From Sphaerodactylus townsendi (Eukaryota): a stretch of 64,000 bases of DNA. Below are positions 6,699 through 57,158 of the stretch, in pieces; within the stretch, counting starts at the first letter, position 1, and each line of letters begins with the position of its first letter. Position numbers and translations under genes: made by a program. The stretch covers positions 32,860,001 through 32,924,000 of the forward strand of contig NC_059439.1 of assembly GCF_021028975.2 (NCBI RefSeq). The letters are read 5' to 3'. The notes under the pieces are model-generated. The model was not told where the DNA came from, did not search any database, and worked only from the letters and a program-made list of their open reading frames with translations.

Positions 6699-7145
6699 AT
6701 GAGGCCGTCAGAAGGCGCCTGCTGCTTCCTGCTGCTGTTGCTGGTGGCCGAATTGCTGCCCGGATCATCCGGCGGCAACAATCCCCGCTACGAGAAATTC
6801 CTGAGCCAGCACCGGGACGACCCCAGGAGCAGCTTCCACGGGCGCTACTGTGACAGCCTGATGCGCAGCCGGGGCCTCACCAAGCCCGAGTGCAAGGAAG
6901 TGAACACCTTTATCCACGGGTCCAAAAGGCAGATCCGGGCAGTGTGCGACCAAGAGGGGGTTCCCGACGGGGAGCTGCGGCGCAGCCTGCGACCCTTCCG
7001 GGTTACGACCTGCACCCACAGGGGTGGCTCAGTCCGCCCGCCCTGCGAGTACAAAGAGAACACCTCGCCCAGGTACATCGTCATTGGCTGTGAAAACGGC
7101 TGGCCTGTCCACTATGATGAGAGCCAAATCGTGACCACGGTCTGA
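6699..7145 (+). CDS. RNase A superfamily protein R1, angiogenin/RNase-like, 148 aa with signal peptide
   Basis: Hydrophobic leader; FLSQH (His12); CKEVNTF signature (Lys41); PVHYD (His119/Asp121); 6 Cys in the mature chain as in non-mammalian RNases; acceptor ttcctgttagcag just upstream; AATAAA at 7368. Confidence 0.95.
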   Translation: MRPSEGACCFLLLLLVAELLPGSSGGNNPRYEKFLSQHRDDPRSSFHGRYCDSLMRSRGLTKPECKEVNTFIHGSKRQIRAVCDQEGVPDGELRRSLRPFRVTTCTHRGGSVRPPCEYKENTSPRYIVIGCENGWPVHYDESQIVTTV

Positions 7146-7462
7146 AGCCGAGGAGAAGCAACGTGAGGCTGAAGCTGGTGGTGCTCCCTCCTTGAGTCAG
7201 TCAACGTCGCCGGGTTTATTTCGAGCCTTTCTTGGTATCTATGGATGCTTTTCCTCACTGAGGTTCCTTGTAAGCCTTCCTCTTATCTTGTTTTGCTATC
7301 GGAACCTGTTAGCTGTCTTTCACACTTGTGAGGAGAAGGCTGTGTAACCTGTAGAAATCATAAACATAATAAAACGAGCCCAGTAGCAGCTTGGCGGCTA
7401 GCAAGGTTGACACCTTTCGAGAATCAATGCTCCATTTGTTGGATATCTGATGGAGTTTTGAC

Positions 7463-7838
7463 CAGTGGTGGGATCCAAAAATTTTAGTAACAGGTTCCCA
7501 TGGTGGTGGGATTCAAACTGTGGCGTAGCGCCAATGGGGCGGGGCGGGGCACAACGGGGGCGTGCCAGGGCATTCCTGGGTGGGACTGTGGCAAGGACGC
7601 AGCCGCTGCGCCGGTCCTTGGGCGGGAAACGAATGCACGCAGGCGCAGGCTGCCACGCACGCCAGTGCACCTCCTGCTAGACTGCTTCAAGTTCTGCACG
7701 CTACTGCTGAGAGGAGGGGCGCAACTAAGGCAAAAATCACGTGGCAAAATCACCAATTAGTCACCCCCTCTCGGCACACACAAATAATTAGTAACCTACT
7801 CTCGGGAACCTGTGAGAACCTGCTGGATCCCACCTCTG
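7463..7838 (+). mobile_element. hAT MITE family A
   Basis: TIRs and 8-bp TSD gttttgac. Confidence 0.85.
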
Positions 7839-8392
7839 GTTTTGACTGTCAAAAATTCGTACCACGAGAATCTTGTTTGTTTCTAGGGTGCTACGGGGCT
7901 CCCATCTAGTTGTTCTAAAGAGAATCTCATTCTAAGGAGAATCTGAGGAGAATCCCTCAGTACTCGTTTTCCACAAATGATAGTGGTTTTTTTTTTGGGG
8001 GGGGGGGGTTGAGTTCCGTGCAGACCTCTCCATTATAACGTTTTCCCCACACTCCTTAACTCCTTAAAATTTGGCATGTGTGAAATCACTCCAACATTAA
8101 TAATAGTTTTGTAGCATTGGCAACTCCAGGTTGGGAGATTCTTGGTGATCTAGGAAGCCATACCTGGGGCACGGAGGGTTGGGGAGGAACATATTATGCC
8201 ATAATATCCACTCTCCATTTTCTCCATGTCTCTGATCTTTGTAATCTGGAAGTGAGGAACTCTGGGAGATCTCCAAGCCTGACCTGGAGGTTGGCAACCA
8301 TCATTTTCAAATTGTCCTCAGTGCAGAGCTGAGTGACAGTTGACCACAAATACAGAATTCAGAAAAACAACTAGGAGCAATATAGAACCAGG

Positions 8393-8913
8393 CAGAGGTG
8401 GGATCCAGCAGGTTCTCACCAGTTCCCGAGAGTGGGTTACTAATTATTTGTGTGTGCGGAGAGGGGGTTACTAATTGGGTCCGCTTTCCCATCTCCACGC
8501 CCTCGCCTCCCCGAGAGGCATCCTGCCTTTGAACGTGAAGGTTCCCTATAGCAATTGCAACTAATAATGCAACTCCCTGAACTGGGTTAATCCCTTTCAG
8601 GTACTGCAATTCATTGATTCTCAGCCTTTCGTGCCTTTTATCTCACCAGTCTCTATCAAAGAACCTGTGTGTTTCACCATTGCTGTGTTCAGATTTGTGA
8701 GTTGGGGCATTTTCTATAATGTGATGATGATTTAGAAATGACCTGGTGCAAAAAAATTTGGGGGGGTCGTGGTGGGGTGGCTGCCCATGGGGGGGGGGCA
8801 TCCAACTCAGGTTTTGCCCAGGGCTCAGGTTTGCCTAGGTACGCCTCTGCCCCCTTTGCTGAGGAGGGGCTGGCGAGGGAACCTGTTACTAAAATTTTTG
8901 GATCCCACCACTG
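8393..8913 (-). mobile_element. hAT MITE family A, long variant
   Basis: Near-identical to 57466-57978. Confidence 0.8.
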
Positions 8914-14950: not shown

Positions 14951-15428
14951 AGTGCAAACAGCAGAGGTGTAACTCCAAGGGGACTGGGGTGGGTGGGTGC
15001 GCAACACACCGGGCATGCACCCCTGTGGGGGTTTGGTTAGGGCTTTCCGGGGGCCTGGCAGGGGCATTCTGGAGCCATGGCAAGGGTGTTCTGGGGCGGG
15101 ACGGGGGCGGAGGGCACACCAGTGTACTGGGCACTTCCCCCCCCTTGCTACGACTCAGGCAAACAGTACTGGTTGCTGCAGCTCCTTTGGTTTCTCCAAA
15201 AAGATTGCTAGTTTAGCGATTTTTGTAAAACCCGGATTGAGGGAAATACAACCGGCTGGACCCATTTGGGGGAAGAGCCCTGTGTGAAATTCTTCCCCGA
15301 AACGGGATAAACAGCTTCCTCAGCCCATTATATTTCGGCTGTGCAGAAACCCCCACTGTCACCCTTAAGTTGAGAAGCAGCCCTCATGTTTCCTTTCTTC
15401 TTCTGGGGGTCTCCCAGGTCACGCCAGG

Positions 15429-15845
15429 ATGACTCCGAAAATCTCCTTCTGGTTACTGCTCCGTTTGGCCGTCCTTCTGGCCGCTTTTCTGCTGCAGTCC
15501 AGTGAAGGGTCGAGATACCGGCATTTCCAACGGCAGCACGTTGATCATCCTCGGACCGGAGCCGCCAACGACAACGCCTACTGCAATCTCATGATGCGGC
15601 GGAGAGGCTTGACGAGAGGCCGCTGCAAACCCACCAACACCTTCATCCATAGCAGTCTCAACACCATTCGAAGTGTCTGCCAAGGGAGACGGAATCTGTG
15701 CGACAGCCGTCAGAGTTTCTCTATGACGGTTTGCCGCAACAGAGGTCGTTATCCCAGATGCAATTATGTTGGCCGGCGACACAACAGGAGAATGCGTCTG
15801 GGCTGCAGAAACGGGGTGCCTGTTCACTTCGACAGAATGCTGTAG
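15429..15845 (+). CDS. RNase A superfamily protein R2, very Arg-rich, 138 aa
   Basis: Signal peptide ending SEG; FQRQH, CKPTNTF, PVHFD; 7 Cys; 24 Arg in 111 mature residues. Confidence 0.95.
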   Translation: MTPKISFWLLLRLAVLLAAFLLQSSEGSRYRHFQRQHVDHPRTGAANDNAYCNLMMRRRGLTRGRCKPTNTFIHSSLNTIRSVCQGRRNLCDSRQSFSMTVCRNRGRYPRCNYVGRRHNRRMRLGCRNGVPVHFDRML

Positions 15846-16256
15846 GCCGCAGCCGCCCACGCTGCACCCGCAGGAAGCCAGAAACCGAAGGAAATCTTGC
15901 AGCGGCCGTGACCTAGCTCTGCTTTGCTTAATGCTTTCTCAACGATGGATCTCTGGGGCATTTCCATAGTGCACATTTAAACTCACTTCGCACGTCTTCT
16001 TTCTCCCCCGAGAATCCCAGGACTTGTCGCTGCATAGAACGGAGCTTACAGATCGCTCATGTAGAAAACGGAGATCATAGGATGCTCAGTGTTGTCATCA
16101 AATGAGAAATCCCAGGATTCTCAGGGGGGGGGGACTGAAATGGATGAGGGACTGGTATAAAATCCCCTGTGTCGATATTGAGTTGATGGAATGAATGACC
16201 TGTTATCTCAGTAGAAATAGCGCTTTTCAAGGGTATCAGTTATTATAGGCCTAATC

Positions 16257-24289: not shown

Positions 24290-24291
24290 TT

Positions 24292-36386: not shown

Positions 36387-36388
<2 letters not shown>

Positions 36389-42879: not shown

Positions 42880-43871
42880 CTGAGAAGGCCATGAACTGGC
42901 TTTCATCTCTTGTCCCACACGAACCAGCTTTGCAGAATGGTTCTGCAGAATGAATGCCAACATTGAGAGCAGCAGGGGCATAGTGGTTAAGAGCAAGTGC
43001 ACTCTAATCTGGAGAACTGGGTTTGATTCCCCGCTTTGCCACTTGAGCTGTGGAGGCTGCCTTTGGTGCCTTACTCAGCAATTGTGAGATGTTCCCACCT
43101 TTTATCTTCCAGGCATGGGGCAGCAGCTGCCCCCGGTCAGAGTAGAGCAGTGGTGGCGAACCTTTGGCACTCCAGATGTTATGGACTACAATTCCCATCA
43201 GCCCTTGCCAGCATGACCAATTGGCCATGCTGGCAGGGGCTGATGGGAATTGTAGTCCATAACATCTGGAGTGCCAAAGGTTCGCCACCACGGGAGTGGA
43301 GAAATCACTTAACCAGCCGCTGCCCCAGGCCTGTCAGCTAAGGGGTGGGGAACATGTCACAATTGCTGAGTAAGATGCCAAAGCCAGGCACGAGAGAGGA
43401 CATTGCCCAATCTGGATGGTAGAGAAGGCATTCTGAATTTTCATGCTTCCATATGTTCTGTTTCAGAGGTGTTTTGCCCATTATGCAGAATTGGGTGGGG
43501 TTTTGGAATGCTGGACTGTACCACTTTATGTTGCAGGTGGGGGTATCTGTGGAAAAGAATGGGAAAAGCTACAGCGCGTGCCGTCAAGTAGCACAGCTGT
43601 GGGAAAGATGTCGCCTAGCCATGCATCATCCTTTACAAGGAGCTTTTTCCTATTTGAGGAGAATATTTCAAAAAAAAAAATCACATAGGCACACCCCACC
43701 TTCCTTCTGAAGTGGTACAGTCCCGCATGCCTGTATCTTCTCCCACAGGAGCCAAAGGATTGTCCTTTACAGATCATAAATGCAAAAAATAAATCAACAA
43801 ATAATGACACAGTAAAGGGAAGCGATAGTTTTCACACTTCCTTCTTCTCTTTTCTCCCAGACCCTTCCAGG

Positions 43872-44306
43872 ATGTTTTCGAAAACCTCCTCCTGGCTGCT
43901 GCTCTGCTATTTTGCTGTCCTTCTGGTGGCTTTCCTGGGACAGCCCAGTGATGGGGCCAACTACGCGGATTTCGCACGTAAGCACATCGGTTATCCGAAA
44001 ACCGCAGCTGACAACCCCAACGCCTACTGCAAAGTCATGATGAAGGACAGAGGCATGACCGACGGCAGCTGCAAAGCGAACAATACCTTCATCCATGACG
44101 AGCCCAGCAACATTCAGAATATCTGCAGCGGGGGAGGTACCAGGTGGTCTGGGAATCTCTATGACAGCAGACAAAGTTTCCCTCTCACTTTCTGCCGCAA
44201 TAGAGGTCGTTATCCTAAGTGCAATTACATCGGCACGGAAATGACCAAGAGAGTCCGTGTGGGCTGTGTGAAGGGGTTGCCTGTTCACTTCCAAACCGAC
44301 CTGTAG
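43872..44306 (+). CDS. RNase A superfamily protein R6, 144 aa
   Basis: Signal peptide; FARKH, CKANNTF, PVHFQ; 6 Cys; closest to R5. Confidence 0.95.
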   Translation: MFSKTSSWLLLCYFAVLLVAFLGQPSDGANYADFARKHIGYPKTAADNPNAYCKVMMKDRGMTDGSCKANNTFIHDEPSNIQNICSGGGTRWSGNLYDSRQSFPLTFCRNRGRYPKCNYIGTEMTKRVRVGCVKGLPVHFQTDL

Positions 44307-44430
44307 GCCGAAGCAAGCCGAAGGAAATATTTCAGCAGCGACGACCTAGCTCTGCTTTGCTTAATGCTTTCTCAACGACGGATCTCTGGGACATCTCTGT
44401 AGTGCACCTTAACCTCGTTTAGCAGGTCTT

Positions 44431-44662
44431 AAGAACATAAGAACATAAGAACTAGCCTGCTGGATCAAACCAGAGTCCATCTAGTCCAGCACTCTGCTAC
44501 TCGCAGTGGCCCACCAGGTGCCTTTGGGAGCTCACATGCAGGAGGTGAAAGCAATGGCCTTCTGCTGCTGCTGCTGCTCCTGAGCACCTGGTCTGCTAAG
44601 GCATTTGCAATCTGAGATCAAGGAGGATCAAGATTGGTAGCCATAGATCGACTTCTCCTCCA
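44431..44662 (-). mobile_element. CR1 3' end inserted in the R6 3' UTR
   Basis: (aagaacat)n start; aggtctt TSD. Confidence 0.85.
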
Positions 44663-45653
44663 TAGGTCTTCCTTCTCCCCCCGAGAAACCCAGGACTTGT
44701 CCTTGCATAGGACAGGGCTTATAGATCGCTCATGTAGGATGCTGAGCGCAATCATCAAACTAGAAATCCCAGGATTCTTTGGATGGGGGAGCTATAACAG
44801 TGGAGGGAGTAGAATAAAATCGTCTGTGTGGACAGAGGCTGGAAAACCTGGTTCACAGATACGCTTCCAGCTGTTGATCGAATGAATGAGCTGCTATCGC
44901 AGGGGAAAGGCCAACGGGTGAGCTTAATAGAGCTTTTCATGTGTGTCAGTTATTAAAGGCCTGGATGTTCACACCTGTTAGTGCATCTCTTGGGGTTTCT
45001 TTTCCCTTCTTGACTTTCCCCAGCCTTGTGAATGGGAGACCAGCGGAACTGACTGCACTCCCTTGAAAAGAATTGTGCTTGCAGTGATATCGGAGTTGAA
45101 GACTGGAGGGTCTCATCTGCGAACTCACCTCTAAAACAGATCACTCGATGCTGCTTTTGTTTTTCTATTTTATATCACAGTTTACATGTGGAGACCTGAA
45201 TCTGAGTCCATTAGCCACTTAGGCCTTTTCCACACATGCAGGATAATGCGCTTTCAATCCCCTTCCAATGCACTTTGCAGCTGGATTTGACTGTGCGGAA
45301 TAGCAAAATCCGCTTGCAAACAATTGTGAAAGCGGACTGAAAGTGTATTATTCTGCATGTGCGGAAGGGGCCTTAAAGAACCATAAATTTTCCCACCATG
45401 TAAGATTTCACAAGTCAAAGGTCACTTTGTTCGATACCTGGGGAGTTTTTCTGGTTTTTAAAAAGCTGCTGAAGTTGAATCAAGTGCTCCTTGCACAGAC
45501 TAACTCAGCTACCCTGAAATGTGATCTATTTGATTCACAGGTTTTTGGATTTGAATGGCCTCATTTTTACCATTCAGCACTCAACATTATGCACACATAC
45601 AAACAAACATAGATGCTTCTCACTCACCCCTTTCATATGTTCTCCCACACTAA

Positions 45654-45923
45654 GGCCCTTTCCCCACTTACCTTAAGCCCCGCGCTACTCTCCTAAAGTA
45701 GCGCGGGGTCCAGCTGCACTCCCCACTTCAGGGGCGGCGAGAACGCAGCCGCCCCGACGCTGCCTCTCTCACGCCCCCTCAGCGTGCGTAATTCCTGGCG
45801 CCTTTTCAAATGGCGCCTTTTGATGACCCCGCGTCGTGGGGAAGCCGGGGCGCGCACCAGGAATTGCGCGTGCTGGTAATTGCGCGCAGCAACCCTCCGA
45901 CAAAGGTAAGTGGGGAAAGGGCC
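45654..45923 (+). mobile_element. GC-rich Harbinger-like MITE with internal hairpin (related copy at about 1201-1450)
   Basis: TIR ggccctttccccacttacctt; hairpin ccccgcgctact/agtagcgcgggg. Confidence 0.65.
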
Positions 45924-47559
45924 ATAGACATCTAAGCATATTCCTGCTGCTTCTTAATTCTCGCACATCATTCAAATACTACTCTGTTTCATGTGCAACC
46001 AGCCACTCTTGTAGTTCATAAACTCGACTGACTCGAAATCCACTTTACAGTCAGTTGTCTACCGATCGGGCCTCCTCCCAACAACCCGAGGCGTCCGAAG
46101 CCTGTGTGTGCTGCCAGACTTTAAGTGGAACTGGGCTTATAGTTTTTTCCCCATATTTTGGAGCAGCTGAGATGTTCCCAAACATTCTATAGCACCTCAT
46201 GAGCTAAGCAGTTTCAGCCCACTGAAGCTAGAATTTGCACAACCAAGAGGAAATGAAGCTTCAAACACTGCAAGACATATTTAGCCCAAGAGTTGTCCAC
46301 CTGGAGTTGGCAACCCCACTGGGAGTGCCCATTGATCCAAACAAGACTTTGCCTTAGAAAAATAACTCGCCTCAAGCCTCCTGATGTTGTTTGCTCCTGC
46401 CCTCTGGTGTTCATTACAAGCGTTACAACCCTTCTCCTCCGCTCTCCCTAGAGATTCCCCTCCCTTCTCCATTCATTTCCCAGGAACACGGAGGGAACGC
46501 TGTGTCAGGATGAAGAGCGATTGCTGTTGCCTTGCTTTATTTTGCTTTACCCAATAAATCCTTGCAGCAAAAAGAAAAACGAGTGTTTGTGTTTTCTTGT
46601 GTGTGTGGCACCTAATTTCTAATCCACCGAGATGGGCTGGTCTTTCCGCTCCTTCCGAGAAGGGTCATAGCCAGCCTCTGTTGCTTGGTCAGGCTGCCAG
46701 ATCTTCAGCAGAAAGGGACAGAGAGTGGTCTTAGAGGGGGGCTGATGTCCGGGGCTTCTCTGAAGAAGTGGGGGATGTGGGGAGAAGGACAGAGCTCTGG
46801 TCTTCAGGCTGATGGGCTCCGTTCTATGTCTTTTGCGCACTCAGAATTATGTGGATTGCAAAATGCCCACCGTGGGTTCGTAGGCCTGATTCATTGCGCC
46901 GCTTAAAAGGGACGGGGCTTTTGGGCCTCGCAAAGCAAATCCCAAAGCGATTTCTGGACCCTGACAGGATAAAGGGGACAGGAAACCAGTTGTGGCCTGA
47001 GGCCTGTCAGCTAAAGGGTGGGAACACTCAGAATTGCTGAGTAAGATACCAAAGTCAGGCAAGAGAGAGAGGACATCTCACAATCTGTATGGTAGAGAAG
47101 GCAGAGAACCTCTCAGGCTTATGGGCTTGGGAACAGCTCCCACAACCATGAGAATAAGCCCCCAACCTGAGCTCAATCCCAAAGGTCAGGAAGTCTGCAA
47201 AGAGCTCTTTTCAGTGTAAGATGGCGGACATCCACCTCTGTTGACTGCTATAGGAAAGCCCAGAGCTCTTAAGGTGAACACAACATTTGCTGAAGTTAGA
47301 GAGGCCTGCCTTTGAACCCCTGCCCAAGATCTCTCTCCATGTTTCCCTCAGGTGTTCCACCTCCATATTTATTTCCCCAGGCATCCACATTTCTCTTGAC
47401 ACCTGGCAAGAACCAACAGCTGAGACAGGAGTCCAAAGCTCTTGGCTTCTCCCTCCCCACCCCCTCCAATCCCCCTGTGTATTGGCTTTTAAAAGTTCAA
47501 GGAAGTTCAGGGTTCAAAGACAGAAATGAACACTTTTCTGTGAGAAGCAAACCCACACT

Positions 47560-47768
47560 GTTTGTTTCGCTTCCTGTATATAGAAACCACCTGACTCTTC
47601 CTCTTTTTCTTGATCTTGTCCCTGACCCACCTGAGATCTATATAATACTTCAGGGTCCAGGCTGAGGGAGAGACTGGTACGGGCAAGATCCATCCCTCAG
47701 CATCTCCAGACTTGGACGGGCAAGATCCATCCCTCAGCATCTCCAGACAGGGCGAAACTTGGGTAAGT
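47560..47768 (+). promoter_or_regulatory. Promoter and non-coding exon 1 of R7, with internal 37-bp duplication
   Basis: tatataa at 47639, GTAAGT at 47763. Confidence 0.75.
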
Positions 47769-50116
47769 CAGAGAAGGCCGTCACCTGGCTTTCATCAAGA
47801 ACTTTGCAGAATGGTTCTGTAGACATGCAGTAAGGAAACACTTGCCACCTAACCAGGCAACAAATGCCAACATCTTCATCAGCAGTGGCGTAGGAGGCTA
47901 AGAGCTCGTGTAGCTAATCTGGAGGAACCAGGTTTGATTCCCAGCTCTGCCGCCTGAGCTGTGGAGGCTTATCTGGGGAATTCAGATTAGCCTGTGCACT
48001 CCCACACACACCAGCTGGGTGACCTTGGGCTAATCACACCTTCTCGGAGCTCTCTCAGCCCCACCTACCTCACAGGGTGTTTGTTGTGAGGGGGGAAGGG
48101 CAAGGAGATTGAAAGCCCCTTTGAGTCTCCTAGGGGGGATATAAATCCAAACTCTTCTTCTTCTATGATTCTCCTAGGCCAGGGGTAGGGAACCTGCGGC
48201 TCTCCAGATGTTCAGGAACTACAATTCCCATCAGCCTCTGTCAGCATGGCCAATTGGCCATGCTGGTAGGGGCTGATGGGAATTGTAGTTCCTGAACATC
48301 TGGAGAGCCACAGGTTCCCTACCCCTGTCCTAGGCAGTTAGTTTTCTCCCTAGAAGTCTTCTGTATGTGTGAAACAGCATTGACTCCCCCGACAGTGGCT
48401 GAGTGGTCAGAAAATAAGAGAACGCATTGCACACCAGCTGTTCAACCTATTTTAATATGTGAATAGCGGCCGACTGGTGCCAAGGGGCCGGACAGCGGGA
48501 GGAGCAAGATGAGTTGCCCGGATGGCACAGCTGTGGTGAGGTGGCAGGTAGACAGGGATGGTGCCCCCTTTCAAATGGCGCCCAGGGCACATGCCATACC
48601 TGCCATACTTTAGATGCATCACTGGCTGTCACCTACAATGGCTGGATAGTGCTCCATGACGTACAAACAAGTCCCTTGTTATCATGTACAAAATGGCTGG
48701 CGGCTTTCCAGAGTGGCCACCAGAACCCATGCTCAGTGAGGNNNNNNNNNNNNNNNNNNNNNNNNNNNNNNNNNNNNNNNNNNNNNNNNNNNNNNNNNNN
48801 NNNNNNNNNNNNNNNNNNNNNNNNNNNNNNNNNNNNNNNNNNNNNNNNNNNNNNNNNNNNNNNNNNNNNNNNNNNNNNNNNNNNNNNNNNNNNNNNNNNN
48901 NNNNNNNNNNNNNNNNNNNNNNNNNNNNNNNNNNNNNNNNNNNNNNNNNNCCCCTTTCTCTCCTGCAGGAGACTCAAAGGGGCTTACAATCTCCTTGCCC
49001 TTCCCCCCTCACAACAAACACCCTGTGAGGTAGGTGGGGCTGAGAGAGCTCTGAGAAGCTGTGACTAGCCCAAGGTCACCCAGCTGGTGTGTGTGGGAGT
49101 GCACAGGCTAATCTGAATTCCCCAGATAAGCCTCCACAGCTCAGGCGGCAGAGCTGGGAATCAAACCCGGTTCCTCCAGATTAGATACACGAGCTCTTAA
49201 CCTCCTGTGCCACTGCTGCTCCTACGCCACTGAAGCTCAAAAGACCCTCGGGGGCGGGGGAGGGGATTCATTGCCATGAACGCACAACAGATATGGAGGA
49301 AGAATTCAAAATCCCTCCAGATCTTTTTATTAGGGGGTGGGGGAAGAGATCCAGAAAACCCCAACAGAAAAGAAAGGAAAAGAAAGGCTTAGGAACTGCA
49401 AACCCAGAAATATTTGGAGTGAAAAAGTATGTTTTAATAAGTCTGAACATTCCTGCTTCCACACGTTCTGTTTCAGAGGTGTTCTGCACATGCTGGTGAA
49501 TTGGGGTTTGGGTTGGAATGCTGGACTGTACCACTTTATGTTGCAGGTGGGGGCATCTATGGAAAATAATAGAAAAGGCTGCAGGACATGCCGTCAAGTA
49601 GCGCAGCTGTGGGAAAGATGTCGCCTAGCCATGCATCATCCTGTCCAAGGGGCTTTTTCCTATTTGAGGAGAATATTTTTAAAAATCACATATGCACACC
49701 CCAGCTTCATTCTGAAGTGGTACAGTCTGGCATGCCTGTATCTTCTGTCTCAGGAGCCAAAGGCTTGTCCTTTGTACCCTGTTTCCCCTAATATAAGACA
49801 CCCCCGAAAAATAAGACATAGTAGAGGTTTTGCTGAAGTACGAAATATAAGGCATCCCCCAAAAGTAAGACATAGCAAAGTTTTTGTTTGGAAGCATGCG
49901 CGACGAACAGAACACAGGAAAAATAAGACATCCCCTGAAAATAAGACACAGCGCATCTTTGGGAGCAAAAATTAATATAAGACACTGTCTTATATTCGGG
50001 GAAACACGGTAGATAATAAATGCAAAAAAACCCATCAACAAATAATGTCATCGTAAAGAGAAAGCGACAGTTTTCACATTTCCTTCTTCTTCCATAGTCT
50101 CCAAGACCCCACCAGG

Positions 50117-50551
50117 ATGTCTCTGAAAATCTCTTCTTTGCTGTTGCTCTGCTCTTTTGCTGTCCTTCTGGTGGCTTTCCTGGGACAGTCCAGCGATGGG
50201 GCCACCTACGCGGATTTCGCACGGCAGCACATAGAACCTTCAGGACCCGGGAACAGCAACCCGAACGCCTACTGCAACCGCATGATGAGGCAGAGAGGCA
50301 TGACCACAGGAGCCTGCAAAACCTACAACACCTTCATCCATAGCGATCCCGACAGCATTCAGAATATCTGCTGCAGGCACTGGATCTGTACCTCCGGCAA
50401 TTTTTACAACAGCAGACAGCGCTTCCGTGTCACCGCCTGCTTCAATATCGGTCTTTATCCTAATTGCAATTATGTCGGCACACGAATGACCAAGAAAATT
50501 TGTGTGGCCTGTGTAAACGGGCTGCCTGTTCACTTTGAGAAATTCCTGTAG
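50117..50551 (+). CDS. RNase A superfamily protein R7, Cys-rich, 144 aa
   Basis: Signal peptide; FARQH, CKTYNTF, PVHFE; 9 Cys in the mature chain. Confidence 0.95.
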   Translation: MSLKISSLLLLCSFAVLLVAFLGQSSDGATYADFARQHIEPSGPGNSNPNAYCNRMMRQRGMTTGACKTYNTFIHSDPDSIQNICCRHWICTSGNFYNSRQRFRVTACFNIGLYPNCNYVGTRMTKKICVACVNGLPVHFEKFL

Positions 50552-50930
50552 GCTGAAGCAACTTGCGACACGCTGCCAGGAAGCCGGAAGCCGAATGAAA
50601 TATTGCAGCGACGCCGACCTAGCTCCGCTTTGCTTAATGCTTTCTCAGCGATGGATCTCTGGGACATACCTGTAGTGCATCTGAAACTCATTTAGATGGT
50701 CTTCCTTCTCCTGCGAGTATCACCAGGACTTGTCGCTGTATAGGGTGGAGTTTGTTGATCACTCACGTAGGATACTCAGTCAGTGCTGTCAACAAACTAG
50801 AAATCTCAGGATTCTTGGAGTGGAGGTGGGGGAAGCTATAACAGTTGAGGGAGTGGAATAAAATCACCTGTGTGGACAGAGGCAGAAAAGCCTGGTTCAC
50901 AAGCATATATTCAGTGGTTGATGGAACGAA

Positions 50931-51551
50931 TCGCCATATCTCAAAAAGGATATCGAAGAGATAGAAAAAGTGCAGAGAAGGGCAACAAGGATGATTGAGG
51001 GACTGGAGCACCTTCCTTACGAGGAGAGGCTGCAGCGTTTGGGACTCTTTAGTTTGGAGAGGAGACGTCTGAGGGGGGATGTGATTGAAGTCTATAAAAT
51101 TATGCATGGGGTAGAAAATGTGGACAGAGAGAAATTTTTCTCTCTTTCTCACAATACTAGAACCAGGGGGCATCCATTGAAAATGCTGGGGGGGGGGGGA
51201 GAGAATTAGGACTAATAAAAGGAAACACTTCTTCATGCAACATGTGATTGGTGTTTGGAATATGCTGCCACAGGAGGTGGTGATGGCCACTAACCTGGAT
51301 AGCTTTAAAAGGGGCTTGGATAGATTTATGAAGGAGAAGTCCATCTATGGCTACCAATCTTGATCCTCCTTGATCTGAGATTGCAAAGGCCTTAGCAGAC
51401 CAGGTGCTCAGGAGCAGCAGCCGCAGAAGGCCATTGCTTTCACCTCCTGCATGTGATCTCCCAAAGGCACCTGGTGGGCCACTGCGAGTAGCAGAGTGCT
51501 GGACTAGATGGACTCTGGTCTGTTCCAGCTGGCTAGTTCTTATGTTCTTAT
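50931..51551 (+). mobile_element. CR1 LINE 3' fragment
   Basis: Same ORF2 C-terminus and tail as other copies. Confidence 0.9.
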
Positions 51552-52675
51552 GAATGAGCTGCTATCACTGCGCAAAGGGTGAGCCTAATAGAGCTTTTCA
51601 AAGGTGTTGGTTATTAAAGGCCTGGTTCACTCATGTAAGTGCATCTCTTTGGATTTCTCTTCCCTTCGTGACTGTCTCTACCCCTCTGACTGGGAGGAGA
51701 TCATGAGAACTGACTGCACTCCCTTGAAAAGAATTGAGCAGGAGGTGATATCGGAGTTTGAGGCCGGGGTGTCTCATCTACAAACTCACCGTTAAAACTG
51801 ATGATTCGATGCTGCTTCTGTTTTTCTGCTTTATATCCCACAGTACATGTGGAGACTTGAATTCGAGTCCACTAGCAACTCAGAGACCCATAAATTTTCC
51901 CACCATGTGAGATTTCATAAGTCAAAGCTCATTTTGTTCGATATCTGGAGAGTTTTTCTGGTTTTTAAAAAGCGGCTGAACTTGAATCAGGACCCACTTC
52001 TACAGACCAACACAGCTACCCTGAAATCTGATCTATTTGATTCACAGGTTTTTACATTTGAATGATTTCATTCTTACCACTCAGTCCACTGAAGCTAGAA
52101 TTCGCACAACCAAGAGCAATAGAGGCTTCCGACACTGCAGGTCATATTTAGCCCAGGAGGTATCCAACTTGCAGTTGGCAAGCCCACTGGGAGTGCCCAT
52201 GGATCCAAACAAGACTTTGCCTTAACTATATAAGTAGCCGCAAGCCTCCTGATGTTGTTTTCTGTGGCCCTCTGGTGGAGTGAGCGGGAAACTGCACCCG
52301 GGGCGTGCATTTGCCCTGCTCCTTGCCACACACCCCTCCTGCCACGCCCATGCCACGCCCAAGCACGAGCCCGGAGCATCGCGCCCCACCTGGCCCCTTG
52401 GGCCCCATGCCACTGGTTACAACCCTACAGATGAGCCAGTAAGTCTTCCCACCCTTCCTCATTCATCCCCCAGCAATGCGGAGGGAACATTGTGTCAGGA
52501 TGGAGAGCAATTGCTTCTGCCTCGCTTTATTTTGCTTTACCGCTTACCCAATAAATCCTTGCAGCAAAAAGAAAAAAGGAGTGTTTGTGTTTTCTTGTGT
52601 GTGTGTCACTTAACTTCTAATCCACCGAGATGCGCTGGGCTTACCGCTCCTTCCGAGAAGGGTCATAGCCAGCCT

Positions 52676-53280
52676 CAAAAAGAATATTAAAGAGAAAAAG
52701 TGCAGAGAAGGGCAACGAGGATGATTGGAGCACCTTCCTTACGAGGAGAGGCTGCAGCGTTTGGGACTCTTTAGTTTGGAGAGGAGATGGCTGAGGGGGG
52801 ATATGATTGAAGTCTATAAAATTATGCATGGGGTAGAAAATGTTGACAGAGAGAAATTTTTCTCTCTTTCTCACAATACCAGAACCAGGGGGCATCCATT
52901 GAAAATGCTGGGGGGAAGAATTAGGACTAATAAAAGGAAACACTTCTTCACGCAACGTGTGATTGGTGTTTGGAATATGCTGCCACAGGAGGTGGTGATG
53001 GCCACTAACCTGGATAGCTTTAAAAGGGGCTTGGACAGATTTATGGAGGAGAAGTCGATCTATGGCTACCAATCTTGATCCTCTTTGATCTGAGATTGCA
53101 AAGGCCTTAGCAGACCAGGTGCTCGGGAGCAGCAACAGCCGCAGAAGGCCATTGCTTTCACATCCTGCCTGTGAGCTCCCAAAGGAACCTGGTGGGCCAC
53201 TGCGAGTAGCAGAGAGCTGGACTAGATGGACTCTGGTCTGATCCAGCTGGCTTGTTCTTATGTTCTTATGTTCTATGTTC
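52676..53280 (+). mobile_element. CR1 LINE 3' fragment
   Basis: 117-aa CR1 C-terminal ORF and ttcttatg tail. Confidence 0.9.
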
Positions 53281-54149
53281 TCCCTTGCTTGGTGGGGCTT
53301 CCAGATCTTCAGCAGAAAGGGACAGAGAGTGGTCTTAGAGGGGGGTTGATGTCCAGGGCTTCTCTGAAGAAGAGGGGGGATGTGTGGAGAAGGACAGAGC
53401 TCTGGTCTTCAGGCTGACGGGCTCAGGTCTATGTCTTTTGCACACTCAGAATGATGGGAATTGCAAAATGCCAACCGTGGGTTCGTAGACCTAATTGTGT
53501 CACTGCAGGAGGGACAGGCATTTTGAGTCTCACAAAGCAATCTCTCAGTGAATTCTCCACTCTGACGGGGGAAAGGGACAGGAAACCAGCCGCTGCCCCA
53601 GGCCTGTCAGCTAAGGGGTGGGACCATCTCACAATTGCTGAGTAAGACACCAAATCTGTATGTGAGAGAATCTGTATGGTAGAGAAGGCGGAGAACCCCC
53701 TCACGTGTAAAGGCACTAGCACCCACAACCATGAGAATAAGCCCCCAACGAGCTCATTCCCAAATATTGTGAGCCAGGAAGTCTTCAAAGAGCTCTTTGG
53801 CGGGCATCCACCTCAGTTGACTGGTGTAGGAAAGTCCAGCACTCTTAAGGAGAACACAACAGCTGCTTAAGTTGGAGATGCTGGCCTTTGAACCCCTGCC
53901 CAAGATCTCACTCCTGGTTTCTCTCAGGTGTTCCACCTCCACATTTATTTCCCCAGGCGTTCGGCCCATGCGTCCACATTTCTCTTGACACCTGGCAAGG
54001 ACCAACAGGAGTCCAGAGCTCTTGGCTTCTCCCCCACCCCACTCCAATTCCTCTGTCATCTATCCTGGCTTTGAAAAGTTCAAGGAAGTTCAGGATTCAA
54101 AGAAATAAATTAATCCATTTCCATGGAAACACCCCAAAAATCACTTTTT

Positions 54150-54324
54150 GTTTCGCATCTTGTATAAAGAAACCATCTGATTCTTCCTCTTTTTTTTGAT
54201 CCTGCCCCTGCACCAAATGAGATCTATATAATACTTCAGAGTCCAGGCTGAGGGAGAGACTTGGACGGGCAAGATCCATCCCTCAGCGTCTCCAGGGCTC
54301 AGGCAGGACGAAACTTGGGTAAGT
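54150..54324 (+). promoter_or_regulatory. Promoter and non-coding exon 1 of R8
   Basis: tatataa at 54225, GTAAGT at 54319. Confidence 0.75.
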
Positions 54325-54773
54325 CAGAGAAGGCCGTGACCTGGCTTTCATCTCTTCTCCCACACGAATCCGTGCCAGTCAGTAACTTTGCAGAATGGTT
54401 CTGTAGACATGCAGGAGGCAAACTCTTGTAGCCAGTGGTGGGATTCAAATAATTTAACAACTGGTTCCGGTGGTGGGATTCACATAATTTAACAACTGAT
54501 CGTATACAAGCACCATTTTAACAACCGGTTCTGCCGAAGTGGCGCCAATTTGCTGAATCCCCTGCTTGTAGCCGGACCAGGCAACAAATGCCAACATCTT
54601 CATAGTTCCCAATATGTCATCGAAAGTTAGATTCTTGCTAATCAAAAAGCGTCTTGGAGGAACTTGGAATGTATCGTCTTTCTTCATGGAGCCTGAGGGC
54701 TGTTTGCCATTGTGGCTTATACCGGTTGATAGAGATCTCTGCGACCACCCCCATAGTGGTGTAGGGTGTAGGG

Positions 54774-55312
54774 CAGTGATGACGAACCTTTTCGAGGCCG
54801 AGTGCCCAAATTGCAACCCAAAACACACTTATTTATCACAAAGTGCCAACATGGCAATTTAACCTGAATACTGAGGTTTTAGTTTAGAAAAAAACGGTTG
54901 GCTCTGAGACGTGCGTTACTGAGGAGTAAGCTTGGCGGTAGTCGGTGGCTTTGCTTTGAAGCAACCGTGCAACTCTTCAAACAGGTGACTCACGACCCTA
55001 GGAGGGTATACACAGAAGCAAGCCCCATTGCCAGCAACCGAGCTTACTCCCAGGTAAAGGATCGCGCTTAAGTTCTTCGCATGAAAATCAGTGGGGTTTA
55101 ACAGCACTTAACAGGGTTACCTACACTGCTTCCCCAAAACTAGGTCTTAGGTTTAATGCTAATAATCGAGCCCAGCGGCCTAAGCCAGCCTAGATGTGTG
55201 TGCGTGGGGGGGGGCAATTTCCCCCCCACATGATGAACTCTGTTTGCGTGTGCCCACAGAGAGGGCTCTGAGTGCCACCTCTGGCACCCGTGCCATAGGT
55301 TCGCCACCACTG
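54774..55312 (-). mobile_element. hAT MITE family B
   Basis: TSD gtgtaggg. Confidence 0.85.
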
Positions 55313-55810
55313 GTGTAGGGTGAAACCCCCAATGCTCTGGTGCCCACGAGTGTACTTTTGACTCTCATATAAATGGTGGATTCCCCTTCACAACAATAAA
55401 TCAAGCCACTCTGTCCATTACCAGGTTGAGGTAATGAAACCACAGTGCTGGATTCTGAAAACCAGATGTTTGGCAGGACAATATAGCTCAGAGACTGTGA
55501 CATACAACGGTCTTCAGTGTATGGCCATATTTGTGATGTACAACGGTCTTCACTGTCCAAAGTTGGTCACATTTGAGAGTCAACAAGTTTTCTTTTGATG
55601 CCTAGTGTCAGATATCCCATTTTTCCTATCTGACTTGTGTTGAATTTGATCTTTAGTATTTGCTTACAGAGATCCTGAGACAGCTGAAGTTAGGTTGTGT
55701 CTCCCCTGAGATGGTAAAGTTGGGCCCGGACTGTACCATTTCACATGGCAGGTGGGGGCTTACATGTTCAAATGGTTGTAAACAGAAAACTGGACGGGAA
55801 GGGGAAAGCT

Positions 55811-56105
55811 TGCAGGATTTGTAATTGGTTGACTGGCCGAACACAAAGAGTGCTCATCGATGGCTCATTTTCATCCTGGAGAGAAGTGAGTAGTGGGGTG
55901 CCACAGGGCTCTGTCCTGGGCCCAGTGCTATTCAATATTTTTATCAATGACTTAAATAATTAAATAGAGGGCACACTGATCAAATTTGCAGATGATATCA
56001 AATTAGGAGGGGTAGCTAATACCACAGAGGACAGGGGGAGGATTCAAAATGCTCTGGGCAGAATAGAGAGCTTGGCCAAAACAATTTCAACAGAGATAAA
56101 TGTAA
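55811..56105 (+). mobile_element. Older CR1 RT fragment in the R8 intron
   Basis: [21 protein letters not shown] and KFADD motifs. Confidence 0.85.
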
Positions 56106-56717
56106 GGGAGAGTTTGAAATCCAGTTCATCGACTGTCGTAAGATCAAGAATCCAGTTCCAGTTCTTTTTGTTAGGGGAAAAAGAGATCCAGAAAACCACA
56201 ACAGAAAAGAAAGGAAAAGAAAGACTCAGAAACTACAACCCAGAAATATTTGTAGTGAAAAAGTATTTTTTATAATCTAAATATTCCTGTTTCCACAAGT
56301 TCTGTTTCAAAGGTGTTCTGTACATTACAGAGAAAGGTGTGTGTGTATTGCAACGCTGGACTGTACCACTTTATGTTGCAGGTGGGGGTATCTATGGAAA
56401 AAAATGGAAAAGGCTATAGAGCATGCCATCAAGTAGCACAGCTGTGGGAAGGATATAGCCTAGCCCTGAATCATCCTGCCCAAGGGTGTTTTTTCCTATT
56501 TGAGGAGAATATTTTTAAAAATCATATATGCACACCTCACCTTCATTCTAAAGTGGTACAGTCTGGCATGCCGGTATCTTCTCCCTCAGGACTGAAAGGA
56601 CTGTCCCTGACAGATAATAAATGCAAAAAAATAAATCAACAAATAATGTCGCCGTGAGGAGAAAGCGACAGTTTTCACATTTCCTTCTTCTTTTGTAGTC
56701 TCCCAGACCCCACCAGG

Positions 56718-57158
56718 ATGTCTCTGAAAATCTCTTCCTGGCTGCTGCTTTGTTATTTTGCTGTCCTTCTGGTGGCTTTTCTGGGACAGCGCAGTGATGG
56801 GGCCACCTACGAGGATTTTGCACGGCAGCACATCGATTATCCCGAAACCGCAGCCGGCGACCCCAACGCCTACTGCAATCTCATGATGAGGCGGAGACAA
56901 ATGACCACACACAGCTGCAAAGCCCTCAACACCTTCATCCATGGCGATCCCGACAGCATTCAGAATATCTGCCCTTCGAAAAGAACTTTGTGCTCTTCGA
57001 ATTTTTACAACAGCATCTTGTCTTTCCGTCTCACTCTCTGCAGCAATAGAGGTCGGTTTCCCAATTGCGATTATACTGGCACTCGAAAGACCAGCAGAGT
57101 TCGAGTGGCCTGTGTGAACGGGTGGCCTGTTCATTTCGCAACCGACCTCGACCTGTAG
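56718..57158 (+). CDS. RNase A superfamily protein R8, 146 aa
   Basis: Signal peptide; FARQH, CKALNTF, PVHFA; 7 Cys. Confidence 0.95.
   Translation: MSLKISSWLLLCYFAVLLVAFLGQRSDGATYEDFARQHIDYPETAAGDPNAYCNLMMRRRQMTTHSCKALNTFIHGDPDSIQNICPSKRTLCSSNFYNSILSFRLTLCSNRGRFPNCDYTGTRKTSRVRVACVNGWPVHFATDLDL

What the first reader, a model, noticed from the sequence alone, without database searches (positions are those of the whole stretch)
6699..57158. Lineage-expanded cluster of eight RNase A genes with three divergent subtypes
Seen: eight intact secreted RNase ORFs in 50 kb. R1 is an outgroup. R2-R4 share an M(T/S)PKIS..LQS.EG leader; R5-R8 share M..K.SS..LC.FAVLLVAFLGQ.SDG. Leaders and flanking non-coding DNA stay readily alignable while the mature chains differ heavily. 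Established: RNase A genes undergo birth-and-death expansion under positive selection in host defence (rodent eosinophil-associated RNases, primate ECP/EDN, chicken leukocyte RNases A-1/A-2), and sauropsids are usually described with few members. Inference: this is an independent squamate radiation of innate-immune RNases with divided labour, possibly uncharacterised.
Basis: partly seen in the sequence, partly recalled or inferred. Interest (0 to 1): 0.8.

Follow-up and report, generated by a model that had tools for sequence, protein, structure and literature searches.

The report
Gecko tandem array of RNase A genes
A dwarf gecko chromosome carries eight intact secreted RNase A genes in 50 kb, seven of them from lineage-specific duplications whose mature proteins evolve unusually fast; the pattern is familiar from mammalian host-defence RNases but undescribed in geckos.

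Summary
Eight uninterrupted RNase A ORFs (PF00074) lie at the stated coordinates. None touches an N run, and no ninth copy or fragment is in the window. The genome is Sphaerodactylus townsendi.

R1 is the conserved squamate angiogenin-like gene (dN/dS 0.09-0.20). R2-R8 belong to a gecko-only clade. No window gene has a one-to-one ortholog in Eublepharis, Gekko or Heteronotia, each of which carries its own duplicates. R5-R8 form a clade with no member in any other genome searched.

The mature-coding DNA is more diverged than the adjacent non-coding flanks and the signal-peptide codons. My own M2a-versus-M1a test supports about 18% of codons at omega about 2.8 (p 2e-4).

One correction: extreme arginine richness (pI 11-12) is ancestral to the whole clade. 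The novelty is R5-R8, which lost about 15 arginines along a fast-evolving stem. R4 has lost the His119 equivalent, and a Heteronotia paralog lost Lys41 and His119 independently.

Expression and host-defence function remain untested because no RNA runs exist. This is a new member of a known kind. Three sibling notes on this same window (R4 active site, arginine loading, odd cysteines) were checked and hold.

The parts
6699..7145 (+). R1: angiogenin-like RNase, 148 aa, 6 Cys in the mature chain, mature pI 9.0. Conserved single-copy-type gene.
   Evidence: PF00074 E 2.9e-31. 72-89% identical to angiogenin-like proteins of the other geckos (Heteronotia 89, Eublepharis 85, Paroedura 84, Euleptes 72) and 78% to a tuatara protein. 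Sits in that clade. dN/dS 0.09-0.20 against the Heteronotia and Eublepharis orthologs.
15429..15845 (+). R2: arginine-rich RNase, 138 aa, mature pI 11.7, net charge +21, 7 Cys, catalytic H/K/H present.
23393..23830 (-). R3: arginine-rich RNase, 145 aa, mature pI 11.8, net charge +26, 6 Cys, catalytic H/K/H present. The only minus-strand copy, on a 4.35-kb block bounded by N runs.
   Evidence: Inverted 951-bp homology with the R2 unit at 84%.
31622..32047 (+). R4: cationic RNase-fold protein, 141 aa, pI 11.3. The His119 equivalent is Gln (PVQF) and the Thr45 equivalent is Ala (CKPSNAF). His12, Lys41 and six Cys are kept.
   Evidence: Tip-branch omega about 1.0. P(ORF stays open under neutrality) about 0.07. 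Present in DNA contigs of three organisms, with no stop or indel among the listed differences.
36997..37422 (+). R5: low-charge RNase, 141 aa, pI 8.75, net +4, 7 Cys, catalytic residues present. On a 1.3-kb block between N runs.
   Evidence: DNA contigs of organisms A, B and C cover it.
43872..44306 (+). R6: low-charge RNase, 144 aa, pI 9.4, 6 Cys. Sister of R5.
   Evidence: R5+R6 support 98/87 (protein tree) and 97/95 (DNA tree).
50117..50551 (+). R7: low-charge RNase, 144 aa, pI 9.2, 9 Cys.
56718..57158 (+). R8: low-charge RNase, 146 aa, pI 8.8, 7 Cys. Its model has the RNase A fold.
   Evidence: AlphaFold2 mean pLDDT 90.3. Foldseek top hit is green turtle egg-white RNase 2ZPO, TM 0.92, rmsd 1.2 A.
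15265..16186 (+). R2 duplication unit, paired with the inverted unit 23045-23995 around R3. The non-coding flanks are 92-94% identical while the mature-coding part is 78% identical.
36388..57320 (+). Head-to-tail array of four units of about 6.2-6.9 kb carrying R5-R8. Homologous blocks around the genes are 36388-37557, 43432-44430, 49266-50729 and 56141-57320, with further colinear intergenic blocks.
   Evidence: Self-BLAST. Gene spacing 6875, 6245 and 6601 bp.
31724..31744 (+). Short tract in R4 (EPLGPRN) that shares derived codons with R7 at 50234-50254 (EPSGPGN), against the D(H/Y)P.T.A of the other copies. Likely a micro gene-conversion tract.
   Evidence: Codon alignment, coordinates. The E-to-D variant at 31726 among related organisms lies in it.
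15385..15428 (+). Example of the polypyrimidine tract plus AG, acceptor-like, found within about 15 nt upstream of the ATG of every copy. It fits the family's usual non-coding first exon plus a single coding exon.
   Evidence: Upstream 90 nt of all eight genes. The motif is seen; splicing is inferred.

Best explanation
The window holds the core of the RNase A locus of the dwarf gecko Sphaerodactylus townsendi. It has one conserved angiogenin-like gene (R1) followed by seven paralogs (R2-R8). These arose by repeated tandem, and one inverted, segmental duplication of a single cationic 'pancreatic-like' RNase gene that geckos share with lacertids and snakes.

Each gene encodes a pre-protein of about 140 residues in one coding exon: a signal peptide of about 25-28 residues and a mature chain of 111-123 residues (111-119 in R2-R8). 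The mature chain has the RNase A fold, three conserved disulfides and, in seven of the eight, the His-Lys-His catalytic triad.

The array evolves by birth-and-death. Diversifying selection is concentrated in surface loops of the mature chain. The leader, the 3' end of the intron and the 3' flank stay similar, partly through gene conversion.

The ancestral state is an extremely arginine-rich protein (pI 11-12), kept in R2-R4. By analogy with ECP and RNase 7, such a protein most likely kills microbes by binding and disrupting their envelopes, independently of catalysis. That would explain how R4 can keep fold, cysteines and charge after losing the His119 equivalent. R5-R8 are a younger Sphaerodactylus-specific subfamily. 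They shed about 15 arginines along a fast-evolving stem but kept the active site, so they most likely act as true secreted ribonucleases with a different target or compartment.

Shown: gene content, family membership, fold, lineage-specific duplication, rate patterns and charge shift. Inferred: secretion, splicing, host-defence role and division of labour.
For: Family and integrity. PF00074 for all eight. Invariant catalytic and Cys columns. R8 model pLDDT 90.3, matching turtle RNase 2ZPO at TM 0.92.

Lineage-specific origin.
- A gecko-only clade (82/93) contains R2-R8 plus all other gecko sequences, with Zootoca and snakes outside. R5-R8 have 100/99 support.
- In the CDS tree the Eublepharis, Gekko and Heteronotia genes form a clade (96/99; 98/98 on third positions) that mirrors the species tree and has species-specific duplicates.
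- dS within the window is 0.23-0.58, against 0.56-1.05 to other geckos.
- No relative of R8 closer than 56% exists outside this genome.
- Heteronotia has only three such genes, spaced 16-17 kb, in 70 kb of syntenic sequence.

Selection.
- Mature-coding DNA is more diverged than the flanks (p 1e-9 to 6e-3 in five of six pairs) and than the signal codons.
- M2a vs M1a: LRT 16.7, p 2.4e-4 for the seven window genes; LRT 11.8, p 0.003 for 14 gecko-clade genes. Both hold after removing the conversion tract.
- 24 null simulations gave a maximum LRT of 4.2.
- Window branches have omega 0.77 against 0.43 elsewhere (p 0.002). The R5-R8 stem omega exceeds background (p 0.007).

Charge. All clade members outside R5-R8 for which pI was computed have pI 11.1-11.9; R5-R8 have 8.8-9.4.

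Catalysis-independent killing by ECP and RNase 7: review PMC6313885.
Against: No expression data exist. No run on record as RNA holds the locus, so any copy could be silent.

Pairwise dN/dS of the mature chains is 0.56-1.26 and never significantly above 1. The signal-versus-mature omega difference across the whole clade is not significant (p 0.16). The R5-R8 stem is not significantly above omega = 1 (p 0.074).

The site tests come from my own M1a/M2a implementation, not codeml or HyPhy. Gene conversion among paralogs, of which one tract was seen, can inflate such tests.

Synonymous divergence in the mature part (R2/R3 dS 0.26) is far above flank divergence (0.08). Conversion of the flanks therefore explains part of the contrast.

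Monophyly of the seven window genes is not rejected but also not shown (AU p 0.15-0.37). The rooted CDS tree places them outside Eublepharis+Gekkonidae, which conflicts with the species tree, although the species-tree arrangement is not rejected (p 0.235).

R4's tip omega of about 1 also fits a decaying gene.
Confidence: 0.62

Rival explanations
1. Concerted evolution rather than recent duplication. The array is old and shared by geckos. Gene conversion and unequal crossing-over homogenise paralogs within each species, making them look species-specific. Selection keeps only the mature-chain differences.
For: Flanks and leaders are much more alike than synonymous sites of the mature part (R2/R3 flanks 0.078 against dS 0.26). 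R4 and R7 share a short tract. The rooted CDS tree conflicts with the species tree.
Against: Copy number differs between species: seven here, three in 70 kb of Heteronotia, one in 20 kb of Gekko. R5-R8 share a whole unit of about 6.5 kb including intergenic blocks. Third-position trees and dS group paralogs by species over the whole mature part as well. No R5-R8-like protein exists in any other annotated gecko.
Confidence: 0.2
2. Relaxed constraint on redundant copies. The extra genes are drifting towards pseudogenes, and the high dN/dS is neutral decay rather than adaptation.
For: Mean omega is 0.55-0.77, and about 45% of codons are in the omega = 1 class. R4 lost the His119 and Thr45 equivalents and has tip omega of about 1. 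Heteronotia HetC lost Lys41 and His119 with omega of about 1.2. Four copies carry an odd number of cysteines.
Against: All eight ORFs are open, and none of the seven has lost a core cysteine. About 37% of codons have omega of about 0.1. M2a beats M1a, which already allows neutral sites. The mature part diverges faster than non-coding flanks, which neutrality does not predict. P(no stop) for a neutral R4 is about 0.07.
Confidence: 0.12
3. The function is not host defence. R5-R8, and perhaps all copies, are digestive (pancreatic) or glandular or egg RNases. The loss of charge would tune pH optimum or substrate, as in colobine RNASE1B (established knowledge: Zhang, Zhang and Rosenberg 2002).
For: The characterised iguana RNase is mostly pancreatic with high activity (PMC6794472). 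The closest solved structure is a turtle egg-white RNase. R5-R8 keep every catalytic residue and have a moderate pI. An angiogenin-type peptide was reported from lizard femoral gland secretion (PMC6557888).
Against: Four fast-diverging copies, with positive selection in surface loops, are more typical of defence RNases than of a digestive enzyme. The parent lineage has pI 11-12, typical of bactericidal members. No tissue data favour either view.
Confidence: 0.25
4. Assembly artefact. Some copies are haplotigs or mis-scaffolded duplicates created around the eight N runs.
For: R1-R6 each sit on a separate block between N runs, and the R5 block is only 1.3 kb. Organism A shows two contig versions over part of R4.
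Against: The closest pair, R5/R6, differs at 13% of nucleotides over 1 kb, and the others differ by 20-30%. That is far beyond allelic divergence. Independent DNA runs of three organisms carry contigs matching R4 and R5 specifically.
Confidence: 0.03

Closest known systems
'Ribonuclease pancreatic-like' genes of other geckos (Heteronotia binoei x3, Eublepharis macularius x2, Gekko japonicus, Euleptes europaea)
   Same: Same gecko-only clade. Same leader type as R2-R4, six cysteines, pI 11.4-11.9 in those computed. Same position downstream of the angiogenin-like gene in Heteronotia and Eublepharis, and species-specific duplicates in those two.
   Different: One to three copies against seven here. 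None belongs to the low-charge R5-R8 group. Best identity to any window protein is 56-70%.
Primate EDN (RNase 2) / ECP (RNase 3) pair and rodent eosinophil-associated RNases
   Same: Tandem lineage-specific duplicates, fast amino-acid change in the mature chain, and a high-pI, arginine-rich partner beside a partner with pI of about 9. ECP's antibacterial action does not need catalysis (PMC6313885).
   Different: Not orthologous: the window genes sit among sauropsid RNases. The direction is reversed. In primates arginines were gained after duplication (established knowledge: Zhang, Rosenberg and Nei 1998). Here the arginine-rich state is ancestral and the new subfamily lost charge. Three disulfides here against four in EDN/ECP. 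Cell type unknown.
Chicken leukocyte RNases A-1 / A-2 (solved as 4PER chain B)
   Same: Sauropsid, angiogenin-type RNases with three disulfides, tandem paralogs, one strongly cationic and bactericidal (established knowledge: Nitto et al. 2006). Sequence match E about 1e-22.
   Different: Birds have about three genes (PMC3845642). The gecko array has seven plus R1 and includes a low-charge subfamily and a copy without the His119 equivalent.
Green turtle egg-white ribonuclease (PDB 2ZPO)
   Same: Closest solved structure. 46% identity to R8 over 116 columns, TM 0.92, rmsd 1.2 A. E 1e-27 to 7e-29.
   Different: A turtle protein from a separate clade. It gives no information on expansion or function in geckos.
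Colobine monkey RNASE1B
   Same: A duplicate RNase that lost positive charge under positive selection while keeping its catalytic residues (established knowledge: Zhang et al. 2002). This resembles the R5-R8 stem.
   Different: That is a mammalian pancreatic-type gene with a known digestive context. The gecko case has four descendants and no known tissue.

Membership tests
RNase A superfamily (Pfam PF00074) | Profile match above the curated threshold | tested here: met
   All eight score 85-109 bits against a cut-off of 23.1.
RNase A superfamily (Pfam PF00074) | Catalytic triad equivalent to His12, Lys41, His119, and the CKxxNTF signature | tested here: met
   Present in R1-R3 and R5-R8. R4 is the exception, with Gln for His119 and CKPSNAF. 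R4 is a member by descent but is probably not an active enzyme.
RNase A superfamily (Pfam PF00074) | Six conserved cysteines forming the three core disulfides | tested here: met
   Six invariant Cys columns in all eight. Extra Cys in R2, R5, R8 (7) and R7 (9). Disulfide pairing itself was not tested.
RNase A superfamily (Pfam PF00074) | Alpha+beta RNase A fold | tested here: met
   Tested for R8 only. AlphaFold2 pLDDT 90.3; top 49 PDB matches shown are all RNase A-family members (mostly angiogenins); best is 2ZPO at TM 0.92.
RNase A superfamily (Pfam PF00074) | Cleavable N-terminal signal peptide (secreted protein) | tested here: inconclusive
   Hydrophobic leader of about 22-28 residues ending in small residues, modelled as a helix. 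No signal-peptide predictor was available.
RNase A superfamily (Pfam PF00074) | Whole coding region in one exon behind a 5'-UTR intron | tested here: inconclusive
   Uninterrupted ORFs, with a polypyrimidine-AG motif within about 15 nt of each ATG. No RNA reads were available to show the joint.
Squamate angiogenin-like ortholog group (R1 only) | Groups with angiogenin-like genes of other squamates, at a syntenic position, under purifying selection | tested here: met
   72-89% identity to the gecko orthologs. Clade with tuatara at SH-aLRT 95. First gene of the array in Heteronotia and Eublepharis too. dN/dS 0.09-0.20.
Rapidly evolving host-defence RNases (functional class: EDN/ECP, mouse Ears, chicken A-2) | Lineage-specific tandem duplication | tested here: met
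Rapidly evolving host-defence RNases (functional class: EDN/ECP, mouse Ears, chicken A-2) | Codons with dN/dS above 1 in the mature chain | tested here: met
   M2a vs M1a p 2.4e-4 (window genes) and 0.003 (gecko clade), with null simulations. This is my own implementation and recombination is only partly controlled.
Rapidly evolving host-defence RNases (functional class: EDN/ECP, mouse Ears, chicken A-2) | Very high net positive charge | tested here: met
   R2-R4 have pI 11.3-11.8 and net charge +18 to +26. Not met by R5-R8 (pI 8.8-9.4, net +4 to +8).
Rapidly evolving host-defence RNases (functional class: EDN/ECP, mouse Ears, chicken A-2) | Orthology to mammalian RNase 2/3 | tested here: not met
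   R2-R8 sit in a squamate clade next to turtle RNases. The mammalian sequences sampled (angiogenin, RNase 4) are elsewhere in the tree. The resemblance is convergent, not membership.
Rapidly evolving host-defence RNases (functional class: EDN/ECP, mouse Ears, chicken A-2) | Expression in leukocyte granules or epithelia; antimicrobial or antiviral activity | not testable with these tools
   No RNA run holds the locus.

The most novel reading that the evidence does not exclude
In Sphaerodactylus an ancestral ECP-like, arginine-rich bactericidal RNase gave rise, under positive selection, to a four-gene de-cationised but catalytically intact subfamily (R5-R8). This is the reverse of the primate EDN-to-ECP trajectory. 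In parallel, two gecko lineages independently retained a cationic, catalytically dead 'pseudo-RNase' (R4 here, HetC in Heteronotia) as a non-enzymatic antimicrobial protein. Together these would be a natural experiment that separates charge-based killing from RNA cleavage within one array.
Probability: 0.3. Interest if true: 0.6.

Novelty: new member of a known kind. Interest (0 to 1): 0.45.

Why it matters
RNase A genes are a textbook case of birth-and-death evolution under host-pathogen pressure, but almost all evidence comes from mammals, with a little from chicken and fish. The standard statement is that non-mammals have 3-5 genes (PMC3845642).

This array has eight genes in 50 kb. Synteny with two other geckos suggests at least one more lies just upstream of the window. 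Independent smaller expansions occur in other geckos. The same evolutionary mode therefore operates in squamates.

The array also offers paired natural variants in one genome: arginine-rich and charge-depleted, catalytic and non-catalytic. That is convenient material for asking which properties of these proteins kill microbes. The finding extends a known pattern and does not overturn anything.

Tried and rejected
- Expression: the look-up of sequencing runs (kind rna) found no run on record as RNA. The six holders are DNA-like. Their contigs show only presence and variants, not transcription.
I did not attempt it by any other route. The charge-loss claim rests on extant sequences only.
- Pairwise dN/dS with bootstrap: no pair is significantly above 1, so no claim of gene-wide positive selection is made.
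- Signal-versus-mature omega across 14 genes: not significant (p 0.16). The contrast is clear only in raw divergence within subgroups.
- R5-R8 stem omega above 1: not significant (p 0.074).
- Ninth copy: none in the window and none in the 3.1 kb beyond its end. Weak tblastn hits there (E 0.02-0.9) are not RNase on inspection.
- Downstream anchor gene for synteny: only the Protobothrops locus shows one, an olfactory receptor. None was found in the window.
- Same-genome look-up: the look-up of R8 returned the public record of this same genome, where the stretches written N in the window carry letters. One ORF listing displayed translations across such a stretch. I did not read further, use or report those letters, and nothing here rests on them.
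- Not run: the costly exhaustive protein search (its 50% clusters would merge R2-R8) and complex prediction (no binding claim is made).
- Not run: a second structure job for R4.

Full report
**1. What is in the window**

The ORF listing and a script recover eight open reading frames at the coordinates given. They are R1 6699-7145 (+), R2 15429-15845 (+), R3 23393-23830 (-), R4 31622-32047 (+), R5 36997-37422 (+), R6 43872-44306 (+), R7 50117-50551 (+) and R8 56718-57158 (+).

All eight match Pfam RnaseA (PF00074) over the full domain, at E 7e-24 to 3e-31 and 85-109 bits against a cut-off of 23.1. tblastn with all eight proteins finds exactly eight places in the window and no fragment or pseudogene.

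The alignment has invariant columns for the His12 and Lys41 equivalents, the six core cysteines and Pro-Val before the last catalytic His. Seven genes have the full H/K/H triad and CKxxNTF. R4 has Gln at the His119 position and Ala at the Thr45 position.

An AlphaFold2 model of R8 has mean pLDDT 90.3. Its best PDB match is green turtle egg-white RNase 2ZPO (TM 0.92, rmsd 1.2 A, 46% identity), followed by many angiogenins. Sequence search of the PDB agrees.

**2. The N runs**

None of the eight ORFs overlaps or abuts an N run, so the frames are safe. What is not safe is the scaffold. R1-R6 each lie on a separate block between N runs. R5 is on a block of only 1.3 kb. R3, the only minus-strand gene, is on a 4.35-kb block, so its inversion cannot be verified from the window.

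Six of the eight N runs begin or end exactly at the end of a copy of one interspersed repeat of about 270 bp. This suggests short unresolved repeat tails rather than large missing segments.

The copies are not haplotigs. The closest pair (R5/R6) differs at 13% of positions over 1 kb. Contigs from DNA runs of three organisms match R4 and R5 specifically.

**3. Whose genome**

Looking up the R8 protein returned record CM037628.2 of assembly GCA_021028975.2, placing the window at about 32,860,001-32,924,000. A paper in the library states that this accession is Sphaerodactylus townsendi (PMC11797025).

That record spells out letters where the window has N. I did not use or report them.

**4. Relatives and gene trees**

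R1 is 72-89% identical to 'angiogenin-like' proteins of the other geckos (Heteronotia 89, Eublepharis 85, Paroedura 84, Euleptes 72). It is 77-84% identical to those of other squamates and 78% to a tuatara protein. It falls inside that clade. Against its Heteronotia and Eublepharis orthologs dN/dS is 0.09-0.20. It is an ordinary conserved gene.

R2-R8 fall in a separate squamate clade (SH-aLRT 99). A focused protein tree shows a gecko-only clade (82/93) containing R2-R8 and every other gecko sequence found (Gekko, Euleptes, three from Heteronotia, two from Eublepharis). Zootoca and snake proteins are outside. R5-R8 have 100/99 support.

I fetched the coding DNA of the other geckos' genes. In the CDS tree those six genes form one clade (96/99; 98/98 on third codon positions alone). 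It mirrors the species tree and contains species-specific duplicates: EubA+EubB 100/99, and HetA+B+C 89/91.

No window gene therefore has a one-to-one ortholog among them. Synonymous distances say the same: 0.23-0.58 among R2-R8 and 0.56-1.05 between window genes and the others. Within-species pairs are 0.14 in Heteronotia and 0.24 in Eublepharis.

A search with R8 alone finds nothing closer than 56% outside this genome.

Synteny agrees. In Heteronotia, 70 kb of contiguous sequence holds an upstream RNase on the other strand, the angiogenin-like gene and three cationic genes at 16-17 kb spacing, with no uncalled copy. Gekko has one copy in 20 kb.

Limits of the trees:
- Monophyly of the seven window genes is neither shown nor rejected (AU p 0.15-0.37).
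- The rooted tree puts them outside Eublepharis+Gekkonidae, contrary to the species tree. The species-tree arrangement is not rejected (p 0.235).
- The root is a long snake branch.

**5. Rates**

Within subgroups the signal-peptide codons have dN 0.07-0.13 and the mature codons 0.17-0.35. Pairwise mature dN/dS is 0.56-1.26 and is never significantly above 1.

At the nucleotide level, the mature-coding part is the most diverged segment of each duplication unit. It exceeds the 3' end of the intron and the 3' flank:
- R2/R3: 22.4% against 7.4%, p 1.3e-9.
- R5/R6: 16.5% against 9.8%, p 0.005.
- R7/R8: 26.7% against 13.6%, p 1e-4.

It also exceeds the signal codons (p 0.002-0.03).

Synonymous divergence in the mature part is also above flank divergence. 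Part of the contrast must therefore come from homogenisation of the flanks. One short tract shared by R4 and R7 (31724-31744 and 50234-50254) shows that conversion does occur.

**6. Codon models**

No PAML or HyPhy was available, so I wrote a GY94/F3x4 likelihood with full branch-length optimisation. Results:
- M0 omega is 0.55 for 14 gecko-clade genes and 0.71 for the seven window genes.
- M2a beats M1a for the 14 genes: LRT 11.8, p 0.003, 16% of codons at omega 2.1.
- M2a beats M1a for the seven window genes: LRT 16.7, p 2.4e-4, 18% of codons at omega 2.8.
- Removing the conversion tract leaves LRT 10.3 and 15.4.
- Twenty-four data sets simulated under the fitted M1a gave LRT of at most 4.2.

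The sites with high posterior lie in the loop after helix 1, in helix 2, in the indel-rich loop equivalent to RNase A 65-72, and in a late strand.

Branch models:
- Window-only branches have omega 0.77 against 0.43 on the other geckos' branches (p 0.002).
- The R5-R8 stem has omega far above background (p 0.007), but not significantly above 1 (p 0.074).
- The R4 tip has omega of about 1.0.
- The tip of the Heteronotia copy HetC has omega of about 1.2.

**7. Charge**

Mature R2-R4 have 22-27 arginines, net charge +18 to +26 and pI 11.3-11.8. R5-R8 have 7-11 arginines, net charge +4 to +8 and pI 8.8-9.4.

Every other clade member for which I computed pI (six gecko genes and one pit viper gene) has pI 11.1-11.9. 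The arginine-rich state is therefore ancestral, and R5-R8 are the derived, de-cationised group.

**8. R4 and a parallel case**

R4 keeps His12, Lys41, six cysteines and high charge, but lacks the His119 and Thr45 equivalents.

HetC of Heteronotia groups with HetA/B and is not orthologous to R4. It has Met for Lys41 and Arg for His119. These are two independent losses in intact, cationic ORFs.

Under strict neutrality along its tip, R4 would stay free of stop codons with probability of about 0.07. Among the differences listed for three related organisms there are six non-synonymous and three synonymous changes, with no stop and no indel in the CDS.

This favours retention as a non-catalytic protein but does not exclude early decay.

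**9. Gene structure**

Every copy has a polypyrimidine tract and AG within about 15 nt upstream of the ATG. This is the arrangement expected for the family: a non-coding first exon and a single coding exon. No RNA data exist to show the joint.

**10. Literature**

Goo and Cho 2013 state that fish, reptiles and birds have 3-5 RNase genes (PMC3845642). The only characterised reptile RNases mentioned are turtle and iguana (PMC6794472).

Searches combining RNase A terms with squamate, lizard, gecko or Sphaerodactylus found no study of such an expansion.

The annotated proteomes already show 5-6 RNase genes in several squamates, so the '3-5' figure is out of date in general.

The independence of ECP and RNase 7 antibacterial action from catalysis is taken from PMC6313885.

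**11. Verdict**

- It is a lineage-specific birth-and-death expansion of secreted RNase A genes.
- Diversifying selection acts on the mature chain.
- The array sits next to a conserved angiogenin-like gene.

It is a Sphaerodactylus-lineage expansion, not a squamate-wide one. Its real peculiarities are the charge-depleted R5-R8 subfamily and the catalytically disabled R4.

The host-defence role and division of labour are reasonable by analogy but wholly untested. The pattern is a known one in a new lineage, so interest is moderate.

Noticed in passing
window 4665-4945, 10791-11058, 35738-36034, 37711-37972, 48951-49232, 58860-59140 (and further copies at 6309-6634, 22730-23044, 25742-26070, 47877-48165): An interspersed repeat of about 270 bp (SINE-like; copies mostly 80-96% alike, one about 72%). 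Six of the eight N runs start or stop exactly at an end of one of its copies, so the N runs probably sit in the repeat's tail rather than marking large missing segments.
   Followed up: partly
L009:10001-10444 (Heteronotia binoei CM063339.1, about 19.603 Mb): The third Heteronotia paralog (P0118, 'HetC') has Met for the Lys41 equivalent and Arg for the His119 equivalent, plus a 4-residue insertion. It keeps six Cys and pI 11.4. This is an independent parallel to R4.
   Followed up: partly
window 31724-31744 and 50234-50254: R4 and R7 share derived codons (GAA CCT ... GGA CCC .GG AAC) not found in the other copies or other geckos. This is probably a micro gene-conversion tract. A variant at 31726 in related organisms restores the common Asp.
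   Followed up: partly
window 15429-15845, 36997-37422, 50117-50551, 56718-57158: The extra cysteines fall in the loop that carries the Cys65-Cys72 disulfide in bovine RNase A. The extra Cys of R8 aligns with Cys65. That of R2 and R5 aligns at or next to Cys72, as in turtle RNases. R7 has three extra Cys in total, two in this loop and one near the C-terminus. Odd counts leave a free thiol or allow dimers.
   Followed up: partly
window 31569-31772: In runs of organism A the listed differences over R4 cluster in the 5' 200 bp (12 of 16 in one contig), and two contig versions coexist. This may be a divergent allele or a conversion tract within the species.
   Followed up: no
window 41325-41789, 52725-53078, 60228-60686; also 50763-51344 and 52641-53135 on the minus strand: ORF fragments that resemble the C-terminal part of LINE reverse transcriptases, by eye only and not scanned against any family library. 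They are repeated between the R6/R7/R8 units. The array is densely packed with transposon debris, which may have mediated unequal crossing-over.
   Followed up: no
L004:1-2956 and L006:1-400: In Heteronotia and Eublepharis another RNase gene lies on the opposite strand about 7-10 kb upstream of the angiogenin-like gene. I did not place these two genes in a tree. In the window the equivalent position falls just before base 1, so this genome probably has at least nine RNase A genes at the locus.
   Followed up: no
L008:14375-20423: In Protobothrops the cationic RNase is followed 4 kb downstream by an olfactory receptor gene. This recalls the RNase-OR neighbourhood on human 14q11 (from memory) and could mark the end of the cluster.
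   Followed up: no
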